Shown here piece by piece: positions 2,783 through 34,179 of a DNA stretch of 64,000 nucleotides. Numbering within the stretch: position 1 is the stretch's first letter; every line of letters starts with the position of its first letter. The stretch lies in contig NC_043003.1 of assembly GCF_006345805.1 (NCBI RefSeq), positions 77,376,001 to 77,440,000 of the forward strand. Direction: 5' to 3'. Source of the stretch: Octopus sinensis. Taxonomy: Eukaryota. The translations under genes were made by a program, and so were the position numbers. The notes beneath the pieces are model-generated. The model was not told where the DNA came from and made no database searches. It saw nothing but the letters and a program-made list of their open reading frames with translations.

Positions 2783-3473
2783 TCATCATCATCGTCGTTT
2801 AACGTCCGTTCTCCATGCTACAATGGGTTGGACGGTTCGACCGGGGTTCTGGGAAGCCATAAGGCTGCACCAGGCTCCAGTCTAATTTGGCAATGTTTCT
2901 ACAGCTGGATGCCCTTCCTAACGCCAACCACTCCGTGATGTAGTGGGTGCTTTTTACGTGCCACCTGCACAGGTGCCAGGCGGGGCTGCCAACGGCCACG
3001 GTCAGATTGGTGTATTTTTGTGCCACCGGCACGGAAGCCGTCGAGGCGGTGCTGGCATCGGCCACGAGTCGGATATTGCTTTTTACGTACACACCAGACC
3101 ATGGATCCTGGCTGGTTCAATTCGATTTCGATTTCGCTTGCCCCACATGTCTTCACAAGCAAAGGGGTTGGCAAGGGTGCCTGTCTTACGGTCCACATTG
3201 GAGTATTTTACGTGCCACGGCACGATCGGATAGTGCTTTTTATACGTACCACCAGACCAGGATCCTGGCTGGTTCAATTCGATTTCGATTTCGCTTGCCC
3301 CAACATGTCTTCACACAAGGGGGTTGGCATGGGTGCCTATCGTACGGTCGCATTAGTATTTTAACGTGCCACGGCCACGAGTCGGATAGTGCTTTTTACG
3401 TACCACCGCCAGGATCCTGGCTGGTTCAATTCGTTTCGATTCGATTTCGCTTGCCCAACATGTCTTCGCAAGC
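2783..3473 (-). mobile_element. RTE 3'-UTR-type repeat with a tandemly triplicated unit of about 160 bp
   Basis: (CAT)n tail at left. Homologous to 48020-48313. Unit with ggatcctggctggttcaattcg occurs three times. Confidence 0.8.
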
Positions 3474-4436
3474 ATATATATAATATATACATATATATAT
3501 ATACATACACATATTATATATACATACACATATATATATATACACACTATATATTTTTTTTTTTTCTTTCTAGTTTCATGCTTATGAGCTATGGCCATGC
3601 TGGGGCACCGCATTTGGTGTTGCTACTTGGTTTCACTTCATGGAGCTTTCTAGCACTGCTATTTGGTGCATGAGAGAGTTCGATGCAGCTGCCCTCATCT
3701 GCCCACCCTGCCGTGAATTGGTTCATCTGGGACACACCTGACAGGAAGAGATCAGCTTCATTTAAAGACATCTGTATCCACCCCATGCAGGTCTCTCAGG
3801 TTCTTCGGGAGGATATTGAAATAGCTGTGGGCCTCGGAAGCCGGCTATCACAGAATCTTGTCCTACATCTTGATGGCAGTTAGGAGTCCTAGGCACACGC
3901 AGTGGCGCCCATTCTGGCATTTGCGTAACTCTCGATGCCAAAGTTCAGGACACATATATATATACACATATATATATATACACACATATATTATATATAC
4001 ACACATATATATATATATATATACACACATATATATACACACACATATATATATATACACATATATATATATACACATATATATATATACACACATATAT
4101 ATATACACACATATATATATATATACACACACATATATATATATACACACACATATATATATATACACACACATATATATATATATACACACATATATAT
4201 ATATACACACATATAAATATATACACATATATATATATATACACATAAATATATATATATATACACATATATATACACACATATACACATATATATACAT
4301 ACACATATAAATATATATATATATATACACATATAAATATATATATATACATACACATATATATACATACACATATACACATATATATACATACACATAT
4401 ACACATATATATACATACACACATATATATATATGT

Positions 4437-4618
4437 GCGGGTGGCACGTAAAAAGCACCCACTACACTCGCGGAGTGGTTGGCGTTAGGAAGGGCATCCA
4501 GCCGTAGAAACAATGCCAGATCAGACTGGGCCTGATGCAGCCTTCTGGCTTCACAGACCCCAGTTGAACCGTCCAACCCATGATAGCATGGAAAACGGAC
4601 GCTAAATGATGATGATGA
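4437..4618 (+). mobile_element. RTE 3'-UTR-type repeat (other copies near 52613-52863, 58795-58981, 61981-62143, 63483-63770)
   Basis: ggttggcgttaggaagggcatccag ... gcatggaaa.cggacg.taaa..gatgatgat is shared by all copies. Confidence 0.85.
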
Positions 4619-7600: not shown

Positions 7601-8690
7601 TAATAATATTAGATGTTTTAAAGTTTGCTTAACTTTAACAAAAAGACATTTAAGGTAAGCAAAATGTAGTAATTAGATAATAGAATGGTCAATTGTGATC
7701 AGGAAACAGATAATGGAAACTCTTCACTTTTAGTTGCCTCTTGTAACATGCAGGAATATGGTGTGCTTATTCTAAAATTGGGAAACGGAGTGCAGATATG
7801 GGTGGGGGAGAGACTTGAAACAAGTTGATTACAACTAACAGAAGAATCTTGAGATCACACAATAGTAAACCACACTAAAATGAGCATGAATTCTATAGAG
7901 ATCCAATCTTCCAGTTTCCTTCTTAATATCTAATAACATTCTACATTCTTATCAGAAAGCGACAGAAAAGACTAGTTGTGGATTTCACTGAATTATTAAG
8001 CCAAAGATGAAAAAGTAAAACACATTTTATAATCTCTTTCAGAGAAGGTTTTTTTTCGTATATCAGTTTGATTAAAGAATATGTCAACTAGGTTTATATT
8101 TTAATTTTTCAAAAATTTTTAAAAAGAGGGGGAGCTAGTATGTTAAAAGTAACTGGTACTAGTAAAAATTTATACAAATCTGATACTTTTTTTTCATTTC
8201 AATAAAGTATTTAGTATATACAGTTACCAAAAAAAAATTACATATATATGAGAGCGAGAGAGAGAGAAAGAGGGGGTTGAAAATGTTTGAAGGATATTAA
8301 ATTTAAGAGAGAAGTGATCAGTCCCAATTATGTGCAGTGACCTCAGCAGCTTATAGTCCAATAATACAAAATATGTGGTTAAGAAATCACAGCTATAAAC
8401 AAAGATTTCAAAGAGAGAATTCCAGAACAATCAAAACAAATAGAATTGTTTGAGAGATTGCAGCAGCAACAACAATGTAAGATAGTGAAAATCTAAGAAA
8501 TCTCTCCAAACAAAACAATTCCAAAATAAACTTGAAAAGAAACTGAGTAGATGGTTTCAGTGAGTAATCTGAAATGAAAGTAAGAGTATCCTGGCACCTG
8601 AAAGTAGTATCAAGCATCACAATGAAGCTGTAATATAAGGCATCCGCCATTCATTCCAGCTGCTCTCATTCATTCGTATGGTATACTCAC

Positions 8691-8861
8691 AACGCCCACA
8701 ACAATGTCCTTGACCAACACTATAATTACGGCCCTTCCACTCAAGCTTGAAACTGACCACTTGCCTGTGTCTTGGATGAGCACATTAACAAGGTTTTGTG
8801 GTTTGGTCAGTTTATCGACAATATGAAATTCAGCGGTAGGTTTTCAACCTCTTCCCCTAAG
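8691..8861 (-). other. Candidate PTC-containing cassette exon in U2AF2 intron 7
   Basis: Acceptor attcttttcttgtttcttcccccttttgtccctag, donor GTT|GTGAGT. Phase-0 reading CTT AGG GGA AGA GGT TGA. Confidence 0.45.
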
Positions 8862-10705
8862 CTAGGGACAAAAGGGGGAAGAAACAAGAAAAGAATAATG
8901 AGTTGATGTATCAAAAACATACATATAACATGACGCAATTAACTTAATAAAGAAGCTTTTTTTTTTTTTAATTTAGAACTATAATATCTGAAATAGATTT
9001 ATCAGCATTACCATAGTACAGAAATATTGGTTACTTAAAATCTAAATAAAATTATAATTATTTCACTACACTAATTCTCACCTTTTATCTTTTTTTTTCT
9101 TTTTTAATTTACAGATTGGAAATTTTTTAATAATCAAGTAATAATAGTTTTTAAAAAAGATTTAGAGAGAGTTTCCTGTAAAAAGAAAGCTGAAATGGAA
9201 TTGGCGAGAAATGCTGAAAGAGAACAGTCTGAAACAGAGAGCTTGCCATCTGAAATAGGAGAGACCTGGCTATATTTTCTACCAAATCAGCAAGTTTCTA
9301 TGAGTCGCATTCCAATCACTTCAGGGAAAAAAATGTAAATAAAAAAAGAAAATAACATTTCTCTCTCTCTCCTTCCATGAGGAAAGCCTAATAGGGGTAA
9401 AAATCTTATGTAAAAAGATTTCATTTCAAGTAATGCTTGTTGAAATATTGAAACCTAATTTTTATTTGATCTTTCAATGATCAATAAGGCATCATTTCTT
9501 AAAAACATCAAATATTTTACCCCACAACTAAATAAATTCTACTTTTACTTCAACTACAGCTGGTAGTGGAGATCAAAGTACTAACAGAATAACCACAGTC
9601 TAGACAGTTGCTAGACACAGAGATATATCCCACAAATACAAGTAGGATTATGTTCTCCAAATTCTGCAGCATTAACACTACCTAAAAGCATTCCGCTTTC
9701 AGTTAAAAACTAGAAACTGTTTCCCAAGGCATAAACTTACATAGAAACTGTATCTCTAAAGAGTATGCCAGTTTGCTGAAGTGCATGACAATGTAGTGTT
9801 GGGGAAAGCTACAGCACTAACTGTCACAGTACCTACACAGCTAGATCAGAGTTCAATGGAATGAGCAAAAGTATTTTTTTTAGCACGAAACTGAGCCACA
9901 GTTAATACCCACTCCATGATAAGCAAGATCTAGCTGTAATATGTGTGATTAATCTTTATAGATAGAAGACTAGTACAAAAGTAACTATACATAATATTTT
10001 CCTCAGCAATGGAATAAGCCTTCTTTTGAAGCTTTATTTACTACTCAGATTATCAATATTATTTCATGTTTTACCTAACACTTTCATTAAAAAGAAAAGG
10101 AAAAAAACTCATTAAGAGAATCCTAAAATCCTGCCTTAAAACAAGACAATGAACAAGAAATACCATTTGATTATCAAAAATGAAATGAAGATGAGCTAAA
10201 CAACAATTTCAATAGACACGAGATTACATCTGCCAAGACCTATTGGTCTATGTATGCAAACACACACATTCATACACCCCCATAAATACATACATATGTA
10301 TATTTATACATATATATTATATATATATATATGTGCACTCACACCAAAGTTCTGTTCGCTAAAAGAGAATGTATTTTGCTCAGAAACAAACAAACTATTC
10401 AATACAGTTTTTAGCCTAATGAAACAAGAAAAATAACTGACACAATATGAATATGTGTAATTCGAGAAGCAGTTGCTCATTAGGTTACCCACATAAGTCC
10501 TGCTTGAAAAGAGCTAAACAGAGGACAGGGGGAATCAAAACAATCATTTACTGAAGAGACTCCCAAATGTTTTTCTCTTTCACACACTTTCTTCTAACCA
10601 AAGCAAACAAAACACTTCCAACTGTCCCACAGACTTAAGATGTGCAATTCATTCATTAATCCATTTTAAATGAGATTAAAACCTTCATTATAATCATAAG
10701 TTTTA

Positions 10706-11881: not shown

Positions 11882-12127
<246 letters not shown>

Positions 12128-15952: not shown

Positions 15953-16584
15953 CTAAAAAGAAATTGAGAAAAATAAATAAATTAAAAAGATATAACAGGT
16001 AATTTGTTTACTAACTACATAGTTCTGGGTTCAGTCCCATTGCGTGGCACCATGGACAAGTGTCTTCTTCTATAGCCTTGGGCCGACCAAAGCATTGTGA
16101 GTGAATTTGGTAGATGGAAACTGAAAGAAGCCCGTCGTGTGTGCGTATATTAATATATATATATATATATATATATTTGTTTGTGTGTCTGTGTTTGTCC
16201 TCCCAACATCACTTGACAACTGATGCTGGTGTGTTTACGTCCCGTAACTTAGCAGTTCAGCAAAAATTACCAATAGAATAAGTACTAAGCTTACAAAGAA
16301 TAAGTCCTGGGGTCAATTTGCTCAACTAAGGTGGAGCTCCAGCATGGCTACAGTCAAATGACTGAAACAAGTGAAAAAAAAAAGGACTTTCTTTTCATTT
16401 TGTGTATTTACAGTTACTCCTACTTGGGTTTTGTAAACTTTTGTGTAGAGCTAGCGAAAATTAATACGCTAATATTAAAACAGAAACTTAACTTACATAA
16501 AACAAAGAGTTGTTCTAACTCTGCAATAGCAATTTACAGCTAGATGGACTGGACAAGCTTAACTATTTACACTATATATTGTTA

Positions 16585-16940: not shown

Positions 16941-17788
<848 letters not shown>

Positions 17789-20700
17789 ACATCAATCTTG
17801 TTATAATACAGATATTCAGTTTCTAGAGAGAAAAGAAAGTGTATATACAAGGGGGAAACAAAACCCTTTTATATATAGTCAACTAACTCATACACATGTA
17901 AAGAGAAACAATATAGAAGAGCTTTTGGTCTTGCTGCCAACAACTTCTCTAATGCATGATGCTAAACTGTTAGTGACAGCAAAGGCATCCAGTCATAAAC
18001 AGCAACAATGGATAGTTTTCTGTTGCTGTGTACCAGTTGACAAGAAGCAAGATGAAACCCATCCAATCCATACTGATAAGAAATACAAACATTATATATA
18101 CAAGCAGAAAGACCATCCTCCAAGAGGTTTTCTGCTAGCCAAACCTGGAGTGTGTGTGTTTATATTACAGAGATAGTGTATGTATATGTAAGAGAGAGAG
18201 AGAGAGAGAGAGAGAACATTGTAAACAATGAATGAAATAAGCATGAAATGAGAAAATCGTATAAATAAAAGCTCGTTAAAATCTATTGACATTCTTTCGG
18301 TTGAACCCTCAGAAATGTCAAAATGAACAGCTGGTTTTGTTCATTAATTTCCGTAAAATTTATTATTTACTTTTGTCTTAAAATGAAAGATGTGTATGTA
18401 CATGTATATGGAATGGACGTGTGTGTGAGAGAGAGAGTGCCACTTAGACATCACTCTCTTTATCTCACACATACACATGCAAAAAAGATGTATGCATATG
18501 TATTTATGTATGTACGTATGACAACACATCCCTTCACTCACTTTCTCACACACAAATGTATAGAAACGTACATACAAAAACACACGTGTGAGAGACTAAT
18601 TACAAATACATAGAGCTGAATACGGCATGCAAAATGTAAATAAATAAATTTTTTTTACAAAAATTAACTAAGTGTGCGGGTTCAAATGAAAGAATGCCAA
18701 ACTATCTCATACCGAATATTTAAATTTGTGAACTTGAATTATTCAATAATAAAAGAAGTTCATAAACTTTCCTGAAAACTTCAATTTATAAAAAATCTCA
18801 CTCACTTAGTAAATATCTCTTTCAGTAATTTACCATAGTTGTAATATATCTCTAATTTAAAGAAACTTCAAGGTAACCCTAGCATGTTTAGCATGCTAGA
18901 AATAGCAGAGATCACATAGTTATTATCGTAAGGGTTATAGCCTTCCAAACAGTCATACCAACAAAACCAATTTTATTTTTTTTAAATAATACAGACATAC
19001 TATATCATGGAAGCCTCAAAGTTATACAGCTATTTTGTCTAATAGTATTCATTCATTCAATAAATATTTTTTTTACATTATGTATATAGAATAAACTGTG
19101 AATTTTGAAAACACTGAAATGAATATATATTAAATTATCATTAATCAAGTGTCCTCTGCATTCATCATCCTTATCTCATAACATACATCACACTTTGCAC
19201 ACAGGTTATACAGTCTGCCCTTCATTTGTCAAGAGACATCTTGATGAACAGAAATTATTTCTGTTGATAAAGATAGCTCTGTGAATTGACCTTACTCTGG
19301 TTACTATGCCTAAGCAACACCTACCTCCACTGACTAGGTCACCAAGGTAACCAAACAAAATAGACAAGTTCAAACACATAGGGAACGGAGTTTCATTATA
19401 TGAATGCTCTTATTGTCAGCTACACCAGTCAGCCTGCATGGATTCCCAATCACATCTTTTGTGGATGTTATTTGCACTGGGTACCTACTAAGTTTCTATC
19501 TATTGAGAATAGAAATTTCTTGGTTCATAGCAGTAGTTTTTTCTTTCTTTATACAAAATTGACCTTTTGATGTTGATTCAAGACCCTGCTCTCGTGTCTG
19601 ATTCAGCTATGAGAGCTAAGCTGTTGGCTTGTACTTAAATGTGAACTCCACCATTACTAACTCTCACTTTGGTGGTAGTATCTCTGTACACAGCTTTTAT
19701 AAATCATTCCTTTACCCACATTTTTTTAACAATCATCAAACTACAGAATGTGATATTCTTTAAAGGATTTCCCCTAAGTCAACAAAATGGTTCATTTATG
19801 GCTAAGAACATATTTTGAAGTTGCCTCACCAAAAAGAGGTTCCACAACCTGGCACAAACCCAGACTGAATCTCAAAGATAATTATTCTTTTCATTATAAA
19901 CTTTGCTACAATTCTCACTGCCATGCTTAGGACAGTTTATTAATGTCTCTGTAGTTATTTCATCCTAAAGCATCTCTTTTGCTAAGTTTACAATGATGTT
20001 GCTATGCCTATCATTGGCAAAATACATCCCTGTACAAATTTCAGCACCTCTGTTACCATCCGTGATGGTCAACCTTTTATGTTGCCTTCTGGCAGAATTG
20101 CTAAGACATTGGAGAAAATTTCTTGCAGTATTTGTTTTAACATTGAGTTCAAATTCTATTGTAGTGTTCATAAAATAAAGCACCAATCCAAGTAGAGGGC
20201 TGATGGAATCAACTTGTTAGAAAAACGCTTTGTATTATGTTAAATCTCTTTGCATTCTGAATCTACCTGCACTGACACTTAGCTGCATTATCATGTTGGC
20301 CTGCGTCTGGCATATGGAGAGGGAAATCTGCTGAGTGGGAGACTGTGGGTCCACTCCCACAACCCCCAAAAATTAGAACCCAGACCTGTGTCCCAAAAGA
20401 CTTAGGTACAGATGCATGGGCAAGCTTGACCGATAGAGATATCCACTTCTGTGATGGATCATTCTATTGGGATCCACTTAGTTAAATTTTCTTCTGCACA
20501 TTCCACTTGTTCAGTAACAACTGGTAGTATTGATTTTCTGTCGCTTCTCAGTAGCAGTGAAGGTAAGTGTGCATCTATCATTTCCATAGGCATTTTCTCC
20601 AACAGAGTCCTAACTTACACTGACACATGCCTTGCATTATGCAACACCTCACACTTCTGATCCTCAGCATAGAACATTGGTAAATCTACTTAGTTTTCCC

Positions 20701-21803: not shown

Positions 21804-22159
21804 CTATAGACAACTGAAGTGAACTTTATCATTACATTATTGGTGATTACAATATTAACTACGAAAGGATAAAACCACAAATCCACCTTGGCAGTGTAAA
21901 ATAATCCTACTATATACCATAAGGCTGGACTTTTTCTGTTATTCCACTATTCTAATGAATAAAATAATAATGATAGTGGTAATGAAATCAATATAATATC
22001 ACTGACATTTAAAGTTGGTAATATAAGGAGAAACTCAGTGCCAACATCAACAAATATGCAGTATTAATGCCTCTTCAACAGCTCCATTAATTAGGAGAAA
22101 ATGCCACATTTTAACATAGCTTTTAGTAATTTTTCATTTATTTATTGCTCCTCATTACA

Positions 22160-22520
22160 ATTAACAATGGTGAGAGAAATGTGTGGAGTGAAGTTGTTTG
22201 CTAAGAGGAGGAATGAGGACTTGATGGGGATGCTGAGGTTGGAGGAAGCAGTGGAATGGCTGGCAAGGGCAAACGGAGTGTGGTGGTATGGGCATGTGTT
22301 GAGAGATGAAGAGCAGGTTCTGAGGAGGGTGCTTGGGTTTGAGGTAAATGGACTGAGACCGAGGAAAACGTGGAAGGAACAGGTGGAGGAAGAGATTGAG
22401 ACGATTGGCTTGAGAAGGGAGGACACCCAAAACAGGGCAGTTGCTATGGCATTTAAGTAGATCCAGCAAGCCCCATTTATGAGGAAAAACCCAGATATTT
22501 AAAACACTGGATGATGATTA
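22160..22520 (+). mobile_element. RTE-clade LINE 3' fragment
   Basis: WYGHVLR...RPRKTWKEQVEEE C-terminal ORF2 motif, followed by a short gat tail. Confidence 0.75.
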
Positions 22521-32071: not shown

Positions 32072-32129
32072 CTGCTGCCCGGTTTTCAGCGATCTGTCGT
32101 TCAAATTCGAGGTATTCTGCGTCTGTCAT
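32072..32129 (-). CDS. U2AF2: U2AF65 coding exon 1 (MTDAEYLEFERQIAENRAA + phase 1)
   Basis: ATG at 32129 (context acaacaATG) and donor CAG|GTAATC. Peptide resembles the human N-terminus MSDFDEFERQLNENKQ. Phase 1 matches exon 2. Confidence 0.9.
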
Positions 32130-32382: not shown

Positions 32383-34179
32383 TGCGTTTGTACTTGGCAA
32401 TGCTAAACAGTGGAGTGTAATCGCCCTTAAAATTAGTTATTGTTTTATTCTTACAGAATTTATTATATGATGTAGTACTAGTTATACCATGTCTGAATTA
32501 ATGACGGGGTGAGACAACGAGGAGAGTCTTTATGTAGACATTTGTTCAATTATACATAGGACCCAAATCGACTCTGAAATCACACTTAGTGAATGGTACA
32601 TTAGATATGATTTTAAATATACTTAATATAAAGAAAAAAACAGGATTGTCACCATTTTTAATTGTATGTCTACCCAAACAACTGCACCTTCCCTCTCATC
32701 TCCTCAATATTTTTTTCTTAAATAATAGTTAAAATTTCAACTTCATTATCATCATCTTTAGGCCTGGCGTCAGAGCCTCTATGTGGTCGCTCGAAGTGCC
32801 TGAAATAACAGCTAATCTCACTCAACTTGAACCAAAATCATCTTAAACAGGGAAGGGATATGAGACAATGTATTCCAACATTCTACAAAAACGGGATGGT
32901 CGTGGCTAGAATAATTTTGATAATGATTTACTTAATCAAATTGACCCAGGGCTAAACATGAGGTTGCGGGAGGATTTGGAGTAAATTTTTTTATAGTATT
33001 TAGTTATATCCCTTAACATTCTGAGCTTAAATCCAGTCAAGATTGACTGATTTCTTCCTATGGCTCGACATTGTACCTTACTGCAACAAAAATTCGTGGT
33101 CAAGTGCCATGACAACAATGTTTACTGTCATCATTACAGACCTGAACGCTGAACGAAACACCTTTGATTATGTCCCTGTCCTTATTCCATCCAAACAGAA
33201 TTTTTTTTCCGTTTAATAACTCTGTGTCACATTTTTTTTTTTCTTTTTTTGTCATTGGTCAGTAAGTATTATTTCCTATTTGCTTCTATCAAGAAATCAA
33301 AGGAAATGTCTACTATTCCCTTCAATCTTTACTTGTGTCACCTGGACATCAATGTTTTGAAACTGACCTATTTTCCAATACATTTCAGCTCTGAGTTGTT
33401 GAAGCAGAAATGTCATTACAGCAAATATTCTGCTCAATACCACAGATTTGCTTGTCAGTTGATTGACCTTTGCCATTAGTGATTGACAATATGTGCATCT
33501 CTGATCATAAGCAGGAGTTGGGGGAGCATCATGGCCATGTGTTGATAAGGGATGCTTTGAGGTTTGAATAAATATAACAAAGTTTCAAGGAAATACTAGC
33601 CATTTTTCGCACTTTCTAGTGTTAAGTAAATAGTTGCTACACAAAGACAAAATTCGTGTTACATTGTAATCCTTTCAAATTTAAAGGTGGCTTACTGACA
33701 GAATCTTTATCACACCGGACAAAATGCTTACCGGCATTTCGCCAGTGTTTACGTTCTGAGTTTAAAATGTCGATAAGGTCGACTTAGCCTTTCAACCTTT
33801 CGGAATCGATAATATATTTACCAGTCAAATACTGGGAGTTGATGTAATCGACTTGCCCCCGTCCCACCTCATTTCAGGCCTTGTGCCTTCTACAGAAATA
33901 ATGCATTCAATTCTAGGTTAGGCAGTTACAAAGTTCGCTTTTCTGTCTTGAAATTCTAGTTTTGATTCCATTAGGTGGTGTCTTGGTGGTATAATTGGAT
34001 AGATGGAAAATATATGGAAATCCTTTAGATGTATTGTAATTCAAAGATCGAATTTTACCTTATATCGTGTTGGCCTGCGGATTACAATAAGAGTACACGT
34101 GTCTGTGAAACCCTTAACCACGTTACATGTTAATCTAAATATAGAATAGGCAAGTTTAATTGCTCGAATGCTTATTGTC

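What the first reader, a model, noticed from the sequence alone, without database searches (positions are those of the whole stretch)
8691..8900. 171-nt poison-exon candidate in intron 7
A 35-nt pyrimidine tract ends in TAG (8862), with a second AG 5 nt further (8857) and a donor with GTGAGT at 8690. The block is more GC-rich than its flanks. After exon 7 (phase 0) both acceptors give an early stop: LRGRG* or GKRLKTYR*. Inclusion would truncate the protein in RRM2.
Basis: partly seen in the sequence, partly recalled or inferred. Interest (0 to 1): 0.7.

Follow-up and report, generated by a model that had tools for sequence, protein, structure and literature searches.

The report
Conserved poison exon in octopus U2AF2
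A long intron of the octopus gene for the splicing factor U2AF65 contains a short, deeply conserved "poison" exon that stops the protein early when spliced in; it resembles a self-limiting switch already known in the human gene.

Summary
The window is Octopus sinensis chromosome CM016865.1. The minus-strand gene is U2AF2 (U2AF65).

Splice-like motifs alone are not beyond chance: five such pseudo-exons lie in intron 7. Conservation is what singles this one out.
- The 23-nt core CCCTAG|CNTAG|GGGGAAGAGGTTG, or a close variant (three substitutions plus a 2-nt insertion in L014, two substitutions in L016), sits between exons 7 and 8 in five other invertebrate lineages whose introns are otherwise unalignable.
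- All of them have an early in-frame stop.
- A gastropod mRNA contig carries the homologous cassette cleanly spliced between exons 7 and 8, ending ...NEDQLRERG*.

So the poison-exon reading is well supported. The 171-nt length probably is not. The conserved donor is a GC site, AG|GCAAGT, which gives a 97-nt exon (8861-8765).

A significant cluster of five to seven UUUUCAG-like decoy 3' splice sites lies 190-470 nt upstream in every lineage. It recalls C. elegans uaf-1 exon 3.

No octopus transcript containing the exon could be retrieved. Inclusion, NMD and autoregulation in octopus are therefore inferred. Human U2AF2 already has a published poison exon, so I class this as a new member of a known kind.

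The parts
12020..12100 (-). U2AF2 exon 7 ([27 protein letters not shown]), the first strand of RRM2. It ends in phase 0 with donor CAG|GTATTT.
   Evidence: tblastn and reading of the sequence. Pfam RRM_1 covers 267-336 and the exon ends at Q280.
9176..9255 (-). Cluster of five 3'-splice-site-like motifs (TTTCAG, TTTCAG, TTCTCTTTCAG, TTTCAG, CTTTCTTTTTACAG). They lie 314-394 nt upstream of the cassette acceptor and are candidate U2AF-binding decoy sites.
   Evidence: This is the densest TTT(N)CAG cluster in the whole 42-kb gene. P=0.000 against 1000 dinucleotide shuffles. Clusters of 5-7 such motifs occur within about 190-470 nt upstream in all five other lineages.
8898..8904 (-). Branch-point-like AACTCAT (candidate branch A at 8899).
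   Evidence: ACTCAT, ACTGAT or AATCAT sits at the same place in all lineages (alignments). Not tested functionally.
8862..8899 (-). Pyrimidine tract (31/35 Y) ending in the first acceptor TAG (G at 8862).
   Evidence: TTTCTTCCCCC..TTCCCTAG is conserved across lineages.
8845..8867 (-). Conserved core CCCTAG|CTTAG|GGGAAGAGGTTG. It holds two acceptors 5 nt apart (exon starts 8861 and 8856) and a purine-rich GGGGAAGAGG run.
   Evidence: Unique in the window, 0.00 expected. Nearly invariant in 6 lineages: only the N varies in Octopus, L002, L004/L009 and L010. L014 has three substitutions plus a 2-nt insertion and L016 has two substitutions.
8844..8846 (-). In-frame premature stop TGA, sixth codon of the cassette (LRGRG*).
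   Evidence: A stop lies 5-10 codons in for every lineage.
8765..8861 (-). Most likely cassette: 97 nt from the first AG (92 nt from the second) to the conserved GC donor. It is not a multiple of 3, so it also shifts the frame.
   Evidence: The spliced gastropod cassette (76 nt) ends ...GGACACAG|, matching the octopus ...AGACACAG|GCAAGT.
8759..8764 (-). GC-type 5' splice site GCAAGT (context CAG|GCAAGT).
   Evidence: This is the only AGGCAAGT in the 42-kb gene. AG|GCAAGT lies 50-101 nt after the acceptor in L004/L009, L010, L014 and L016. L002 ends ...AAAAGG at the contig end.
8685..8764 (-). This is a possible secondary 5' splice site giving the 171-nt version.
   Evidence: The site is present. 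GT donor-like sites lie 20-74 nt beyond the GC donor in four of five lineages, but the position is not conserved.

Best explanation
The segment is a conserved premature-stop ("poison") cassette exon of the octopus U2AF2 gene, most likely 8861-8765 on the minus strand.

Proposed mechanism:
- By default, exon 7 is joined to exon 8, 14 kb away, and full-length U2AF65 is made.
- When the weak cassette is recognised it is spliced in. Its 3' side is a C-rich pyrimidine tract ending in TAG, with a second TAG 5 nt on. Its 5' side is a GC donor. A purine-rich run at its start may help recognition.
- The message then reads ...NEDQ-LRGRG-stop. The stop lies 79 nt before the next exon junction, with five more junctions downstream. 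That is the standard signal for nonsense-mediated decay.
- The result is less U2AF65.

By analogy with the human gene, inclusion is probably promoted by U2AF itself, giving negative feedback. The conserved cluster of UUUUCAG-like sites upstream is the obvious candidate for where excess U2AF is sensed.

What is shown: the sequence anatomy, its conservation, and real inclusion of the homologous cassette in a gastropod mRNA.
What is inferred: inclusion in octopus, use of the GC donor, decay of the product, and feedback by U2AF.
For: - The window is Octopus sinensis, and the gene is U2AF2 with exons 1-7 in the window.
- A U2AF65 ORF from a marine metatranscriptome (P0003) ends ...NEDQLRERG*. Its contig L001 reads exon 7 | CTTAGGGAACGAGGTTGA...GACACAG | exon 8. 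That is a clean 76-nt insertion relative to the normal isoform P0197 of the same organism, whose protein is about 95% identical to that of the sea slug Elysia.
- In genomic or intron-retaining contigs from five other lineages (L002, L004-L009, L010, L014/15, L016), the only non-coding match to octopus intron 7, and to each other, is this acceptor block. It is conserved about as well as the exons.
- Each lineage has an in-frame stop 5-10 codons in. Every lineage whose sequence covers it has AG|GCAAGT 50-101 nt downstream.
- AGGCAAGT occurs once in the 42-kb octopus gene, exactly 97 nt after the acceptor.
- The core is unique in the window, there is no repeat copy and no Rfam family matches.
- Between O. 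sinensis and O. vulgaris, the longest perfectly identical run in intron 7 (580 nt) covers the cassette.
Against: - No octopus transcript containing the cassette was recovered. A protein search with the cassette's frame-0 peptide found nothing. That search could hardly detect a 97-nt, frame-shifting version, so the null result carries little weight.
- GC-donor use is inferred from conservation and from the matching end of the gastropod cassette.
- The five non-octopus genomic lineages are taxonomically unidentified.
- Octopus and O. vulgaris are too close (about 97%) for strong shadowing.
- Homology with the vertebrate poison exon was not tested at the DNA level.
Confidence: 0.8

Rival explanations
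1. One reading: the cassette is 171 nt (8861-8691) and uses the GTGAGT donor at 8690 as its main 5' splice site.
For: GTGAGT matches the intronic half of the donor consensus perfectly. GT donor-like sites lie 20-74 nt beyond the GC donor in Octopus, L004/L009, L010 and L016, so a second downstream donor may be a recurring feature. The early stop is the same whichever donor is used.
Against: The three exonic positions (GTT|) all miss the consensus. The position and sequence are not conserved, and L014 has no such site within 150 nt. The conserved site is AG|GCAAGT. The spliced gastropod cassette ends on ...GACACAG, as at octopus 8765, not on anything resembling 8691.
Confidence: 0.2
2. The conserved block is an intronic control element that is not itself included as an exon in octopus. 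It might be a decoy 3' splice site or hairpin that, with the upstream UUUUCAG cluster, stalls removal of intron 7. The transcript would then be held back as a retained or detained intron rather than decayed through a cassette.
For: Many public transcript contigs from many animals keep intron 7 while upstream introns are spliced, for example L002 and L003, and the V-tails. The rotifer-like contig L017 joins exon 7 to an upstream alternative acceptor and keeps the rest of the intron. The core can fold into a small hairpin that holds both AGs.
Against: A conserved downstream 5' splice site and a conserved early stop make no sense for a pure intronic element. The gastropod and insect-like contigs show true cassette inclusion. 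The hairpin has no covariation support.
Confidence: 0.1
3. Inclusion yields a stable mRNA that makes a truncated protein (RS domain, U2AF35-binding motif and RRM1 plus a short xRGRG tail). This protein would have its own function, such as titrating U2AF35, rather than serving only as a decay switch.
For: The short tails look alike across lineages: LRGRG, HRGRG, PRGRG.., LRERG, and a termite gene model with LRYRG. Gene predictors have annotated such truncated proteins in several species.
Against: The tail similarity follows from nucleotide conservation of the splice-site and enhancer block. Tail length and the position of the stop vary (5-10 codons). The stop lies far upstream of five exon junctions, which is the classic NMD context.
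Confidence: 0.06
4. A chance pseudo-exon or a transposon fragment with no function.
For: Motif-only pseudo-exons are common: 5 in intron 7 and 9 in the gene. The intron is full of repeats.
Against: The segment is single-copy in the window and loci. It sits at the orthologous position and is nearly invariant across lineages whose introns are otherwise saturated. It is spliced in a relative.
Confidence: 0.02

Closest known systems
Human/vertebrate U2AF2 poison cassette exon (Kovalak et al. 2021, PMC8091538; Pervouchine et al. 2019, PMC6547761)
   Same: It is in the orthologous gene. It is a conserved cassette with a premature stop and is described as a means of negative self-regulation. Fish gene models that end in short non-intronic tails right after ...NYLNDDQ (P0034 TQPRGFG*, P0048) hint that the vertebrate exon lies in the same intron.
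   Different: Neither the position nor sequence similarity could be checked here, because no vertebrate genomic DNA was available. The papers read do not mention a GC donor, tandem acceptors or an upstream cluster of 3'-splice-site-like motifs. The octopus intron is 14 kb.
C. elegans uaf-1 alternative exon 3 (MacMorris, Zorio & Blumenthal 1999, PNAS 96:3813; reference seen, content recalled from my own knowledge, paper not held)
   Same: It is also in the U2AF large-subunit gene. It is an unproductive alternative exon associated with many copies of the U2AF-binding 3' splice-site consensus UUUUCAG/R. UAF-1/UAF-2 binding to UUUUCAGR is stated in PMC2762039.
   Different: In the worm, the repeats lie inside the alternative exon, the exon is at a different place in the gene, and the RNA is reported to be retained in the nucleus rather than decayed. 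Here, the 5-7 motifs lie in the intron, within about 190-470 nt upstream of the cassette.
Ultraconserved poison exons of SR-protein and related genes (for example TRA2B, PMC11791180; RBM39, PMC10477243)
   Same: A splicing factor gene carries a highly conserved stop-containing cassette, with purine-rich sequence at the exon start and feedback through nonsense-mediated decay.
   Different: These are different genes. In most of them conservation is documented within vertebrates, whereas here the core is shared between cephalopod, gastropod and other invertebrate lineages.

Membership tests
Poison cassette exon (alternative splicing coupled to nonsense-mediated decay) | Flanked by usable 3' and 5' splice sites inside an intron of a coding gene | tested here: met
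   A 31/35-Y tract plus TAG, and CAG|GCAAGT, which matches 8 of 9 consensus positions. Both are conserved across lineages. Judged by sequence only.
Poison cassette exon (alternative splicing coupled to nonsense-mediated decay) | In-frame premature stop more than about 50 nt upstream of a downstream exon junction | tested here: met
   TGA at 8846-8844 lies 79 nt before the 8765 junction, with exons 8-12 downstream.
Poison cassette exon (alternative splicing coupled to nonsense-mediated decay) | Actually included in some mRNAs | tested here: inconclusive
   Met for the homologous cassette in a gastropod contig (L001), and for a cassette at the same intron in an insect-like contig (L013). No octopus transcript was obtainable.
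Poison cassette exon (alternative splicing coupled to nonsense-mediated decay) | More conserved than the surrounding intron | tested here: met
   It is the only intronic block shared among six lineages. It also lies in the longest identical run between two Octopus species.
Poison cassette exon (alternative splicing coupled to nonsense-mediated decay) | Inclusion isoform rises when decay or translation is blocked | not testable with these tools
   Needs an experiment or suitable RNA-seq.
Autoregulatory poison exon (host protein controls its own cassette) | The host protein binds near the cassette and changes its inclusion | not testable with these tools
   Only indirect evidence: conserved, significant clusters of U2AF-type UUUUCAG motifs upstream, and the claim for human U2AF2.
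Orthologue of the vertebrate U2AF2 poison exon | Same intron, with recognisable sequence similarity | not tested
   No vertebrate genomic sequence was available. Fish protein models truncated after NYLNDDQ are only suggestive.
C. elegans uaf-1 exon-3 type element | Multiple UUUUCAG/R copies inside the alternative exon | tested here: not met
   The copies are present and significant, but they lie in the upstream intron, not in the cassette.
Recursive splice site | 3' splice site directly followed by GT (AG|GTAAGT) | tested here: not met
   The acceptors are followed by CTTAG and GGGAAG, and the decoy sites by G, C or A, never GT.
Known structured RNA (snoRNA etc.) in an intron | Match to an Rfam family | tested here: not met
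   No Rfam hit anywhere in the window at gathering thresholds.

The most novel reading that the evidence does not exclude
The cassette and the cluster of UUUUCAG-like sites upstream of it together form an ancient sensor of U2AF concentration.
- Excess U2AF would load on the decoy 3' splice sites and switch intron 7 to the unproductive path.
- The arrangement would be shared by molluscs and other invertebrates, and related both to the vertebrate U2AF2 poison exon and to the repeat-bearing exon of nematode uaf-1.
- That would make it one of the oldest conserved splicing feedback devices in animals.
- The same intron shows stop-introducing splicing in insect-like (L013) and rotifer-like (L017) contigs. 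It also shows in gene models from termite, psyllid, spider and fish. All begin with a TAGG just after the acceptor, or end in ..RG*.
Probability: 0.3. Interest if true: 0.7.

Novelty: new member of a known kind. Interest (0 to 1): 0.5.

Why it matters
U2AF65 picks nearly every 3' splice site, so how cells hold its level steady matters for all splicing. A poison exon is known in the human gene.

This work adds three things:
- The invertebrate counterpart has a nearly invariant 23-nt core.
- It uses a GC donor.
- It has a conserved cluster of decoy 3' splice sites upstream.

These give concrete, mutable elements for testing how U2AF senses its own abundance. They also suggest the feedback loop dates from before molluscan classes split, and perhaps before the bilaterian phyla split.

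There is also an annotation consequence. Several public gene models that end in short tails after ...NYLNEDQ are probably decay isoforms, not proteins.

Tried and rejected
- **Rfam scan of the whole window:** no family, so an intronic snoRNA or other known RNA is rejected.
- **Repeat or transposon origin:** no second copy in the window or loci, apart from low-complexity pyrimidine matches.
- **Protein search with the cassette's frame-0 peptide:** no hit. This is uninformative for a frame-shifting 97-nt exon.
- **Third protein search with exon 7 plus the LRGRG tail:** only short genomic or intron-retention ORFs came back, because hits are length-limited. Those ORFs did lead to useful genomic contigs.
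- **Metagenome scan for the spliced junction pattern NEDQ-LRxRG-stop:** nothing. The second scan, for the genomic core, gave one contig, L010.
- **Look-ups of NCBI termite and fish truncated models:** not on record.
- **RNA structure:** a 6-bp hairpin CCCUA-GCN-UAGGG, or a longer pyrimidine-tract/purine-run stem, can form in all lineages. There is no compensatory change, and the octopus fold has z = -1.5. Left as unproven.
- **Recursive splicing:** rejected, because no AG|GT junction is present.
- **Run accessions of the contigs:** searched in the paper library to name the species, without result.
- **The 1999 uaf-1 paper:** not held.

Full report
**What the window is.** Positions 1-34000 of the window are 100% identical to Octopus sinensis chromosome CM016865.1 (locus L012; L012 coordinate = 34130 minus window coordinate). 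They are about 97% identical to O. vulgaris (L011). The minus strand carries U2AF2, the large subunit of the splicing factor U2AF.
- Exon 1 starts at the ATG near 32129.
- Exon 2, the RS domain, is at 22901-22713.
- Exons 3-6 end at about 17400, 16624, 15836 and 13477.
- Exon 7 is at 12100-12020.

Exon 7 ends in phase 0 after ...NYLNEDQ (Q280 of the 468-residue protein P0200). Pfam places RRM2 at residues 267-336. Exon 8 (VKELLISFGPL...) is not in the window. It lies about 2 kb beyond the window start, so intron 7 is 14,037 nt.

**The observation.**
- A tract with 31 of 35 pyrimidines (8899-8865) ends in TAG, with the G at 8862.
- A second AG ends at 8857.
- GTGAGT is at 8690.
- The interval is 171 nt.
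- The two reading frames give LRGRG* and GKRLKTYR*.
- GC content is 43.9% against 27-33% in the flanks, the top 1.4% of local windows.

Motifs alone do not make this special. A simple scan finds nine pairs of a strong acceptor plus GTRAGT in the gene, and five in intron 7. The block has no second copy in the window and no Rfam match.

**Evidence from other species.** A protein search with exons 3-7 returned many truncated U2AF65 reading frames. One of them, P0003, ends ...NEDQLRERG*, almost the octopus LRGRG*. Its contig L001 comes from a marine metatranscriptome. It reads exon 7 | CTTAGGGAACGAGGTTGA ... GGACACAG | exon 8. The insertion is exactly 76 nt relative to the normal isoform P0197 of the same organism. 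That organism's protein is about 95% identical to the protein of the sea slug Elysia marginata. This is direct evidence that the homologous cassette is spliced into mRNA in a gastropod.

Genomic or intron-retaining contigs from five further, unidentified invertebrate lineages all carry the same block between exons 7 and 8. The lineages are L002, L004-L009, L010, L014/L015 and L016. Their exon 4-7 protein, computed for L002 and L010, is 87-90% identical to octopus. In every pairwise comparison the only non-coding match is this block. It is as conserved as the coding exons.

The core is CCCTAG|CNTAG|GGGGAAGAGGTTG. Only the N varies in Octopus, L002, L004/L009 and L010. L014 has three substitutions plus a 2-nt insertion, and L016 has two substitutions. 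Within Octopus, the longest perfectly identical stretch of intron 7 between the two species (580 nt, window 9098-8519) covers the cassette. This is weak evidence, because the species are so close.

**Refined anatomy.** All lineages share the following features:
- a branch-point-like ACTCAT, ACTGAT or AATCAT about 38 nt upstream;
- the pyrimidine tract;
- two acceptors 5 nt apart;
- a purine-rich run;
- an in-frame stop 5-10 codons in.

Every lineage whose sequence reaches far enough also has a GC-type donor AG|GCAAGT 50-101 nt after the acceptor. In octopus this donor is at 8764, which gives a cassette 8861-8765 of 97 nt. AGGCAAGT occurs only once in the whole 42-kb gene. The gastropod cassette ends ...GGACACAG, and the octopus sequence before the GC donor is ...AGACACAG. 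The CAG|GCAAGT site matches the donor consensus at eight of nine positions. GTT|GTGAGT misses all three exonic positions.

A GT donor-like site 20-74 nt beyond the GC donor recurs in Octopus, L004/L009, L010 and L016. The 171-nt form may therefore exist as a minor product. Which acceptor is used is shown only in the relatives: the gastropod and insect-like mRNAs both use the first AG.

**An unexpected companion.** In every lineage, within about 190-470 nt upstream of the acceptor, there is a tight cluster of five to seven pyrimidine-run-plus-CAG motifs, typically TTTTCAG followed by G. In octopus it is at 9255-9176, and it is the densest such cluster in the whole gene. In each lineage the cluster exceeds dinucleotide-preserving shuffles, with P at or below 0.001. 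None of the motifs is followed by GT, so these are not recursive splice sites. UUUUCAG/R is the binding site of the U2AF heterodimer in nematodes (PMC2762039). From my own knowledge of MacMorris et al. 1999, the unproductive exon 3 of C. elegans uaf-1 carries ten such copies. That paper was not held, and only its reference was seen.

**Possible structure.** The core can form a 6-bp hairpin, CCCUA-GCN-UAGGG, that holds both AGs. The only variable base of the core in most lineages lies in the loop. A longer stem between the pyrimidine tract and the purine run is also possible. There are no compensatory changes, and the octopus fold is not unusual (z = -1.5). This stays unproven.

**Other phyla.** Several other sequences point to stop-introducing splicing in the same intron.
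- An insect-like contig (L013) has a 75-nt stop-containing cassette at the same junction: cag|CTAGGGTTAAC..., giving LGLTSRSL*.
- A rotifer-like contig (L017) joins exon 7 to ACTAGGTCAG... and keeps the rest of the intron.
- Public gene models end in short tails that do not start with the V expected from reading into the intron, right after the same exon. They come from a termite (LRYRG*), a psyllid (RG*), a spider (RRLRAW*), fishes (TQPRGFG*) and bdelloid rotifers (TRSAMMCRAFG*).
- Very many transcript contigs across animals simply retain intron 7.

Unproductive splicing in this intron is therefore widespread. I could not test whether it is all homologous.

**How it most likely works.** Skipping the cassette gives the normal mRNA. 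Inclusion places TGA 79 nt before the next junction, with five further junctions downstream. That is the standard trigger for nonsense-mediated decay under the established 50-55-nt rule. The 97-nt length also shifts the frame. The cassette has deliberately weak signals: TAG acceptors, a C-rich tract interrupted by G, and a GC donor. It also has a purine-rich enhancer-like start. That combination is typical of a regulated exon.

[quoted passage not shown] By analogy, and given the conserved U2AF-type motif cluster, I infer negative feedback by U2AF in octopus.

What is shown: the anatomy, its conservation, and inclusion in a gastropod. What is inferred: inclusion in octopus, donor choice, decay and feedback.

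**Comparison and novelty.** This works like the vertebrate U2AF2 poison exon and like other splicing-factor poison exons. I could not test whether it is the orthologue of the vertebrate exon, because no vertebrate DNA was available here. It fails the defining feature of the nematode uaf-1 element, since the repeats lie outside the exon, although the logic may be related. I rate it a new member of a known kind. The GC donor, the tandem acceptors and the decoy cluster are possibly new details.

**Limits.**
- No octopus transcript evidence was obtained.
- The frame-0 peptide search was empty.
- The five non-octopus genomic lineages are not identified to species.

Noticed in passing
window 9176-9255 (minus strand); also L002, L004, L009, L010, L014, L016 within about 190-470 nt upstream of the cassette: A conserved and statistically significant cluster of 5-7 UUUUCAG-like 3'-splice-site motifs lies upstream of the cassette. 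They are possible U2AF-binding decoys and recall C. elegans uaf-1 exon 3.
   Followed up: partly
window 8851-8867 (minus strand): The two acceptors sit in a small inverted repeat, CCCTA-GCN-TAGGG, that could form a hairpin. In most lineages the only variable base is in the loop. There is no covariation, so the structure is unproven.
   Followed up: partly
protein hits P0002-P0196; loci L002, L003: A striking number of public transcript contigs from many animals are spliced upstream but read straight into intron 7 after ...NYLN(E/D)DQ. This suggests the intron is commonly retained or detained.
   Followed up: no
protein hits P0008, P0026, P0034, P0046, P0050, P0052: Annotated 'proteins' in termite, psyllid, fish, rotifers and spider end in short non-intronic tails right after exon 7. 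They are probably poison-exon decay isoforms mis-annotated as coding.
   Followed up: partly
window about 1920-2800 and 3860-4460, with about 2800-3500 between: Intron 7 holds long TA/CA-type microsatellite arrays, which translate as YIYIYV.... Repeated SINE-like units lie between them. This region aligns poorly between O. sinensis and O. vulgaris.
   Followed up: no
window 16028-16370 and 1418-1740: Two copies of a dispersed repeat are about 78-82% similar, in inverted orientation, to a third copy elsewhere in the gene (L012 about 32400-32700 and about 17760-18100).
   Followed up: no
window 22101-22460 (+ strand), intron 2: A 119-aa ORF (…WYGHVLRDEEQVLRRVLGFEVNGLRPRKTWKEQVEEE…) looks like the tail of a retroelement protein. 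Not tested.
   Followed up: no
L013 815-890 and L017 850-1235: An insect-like contig has a 75-nt stop-containing cassette at the same exon 7/8 junction. A rotifer-like contig uses an upstream alternative acceptor there. Both begin with TAGG just after the acceptor, as in molluscs.
   Followed up: partly
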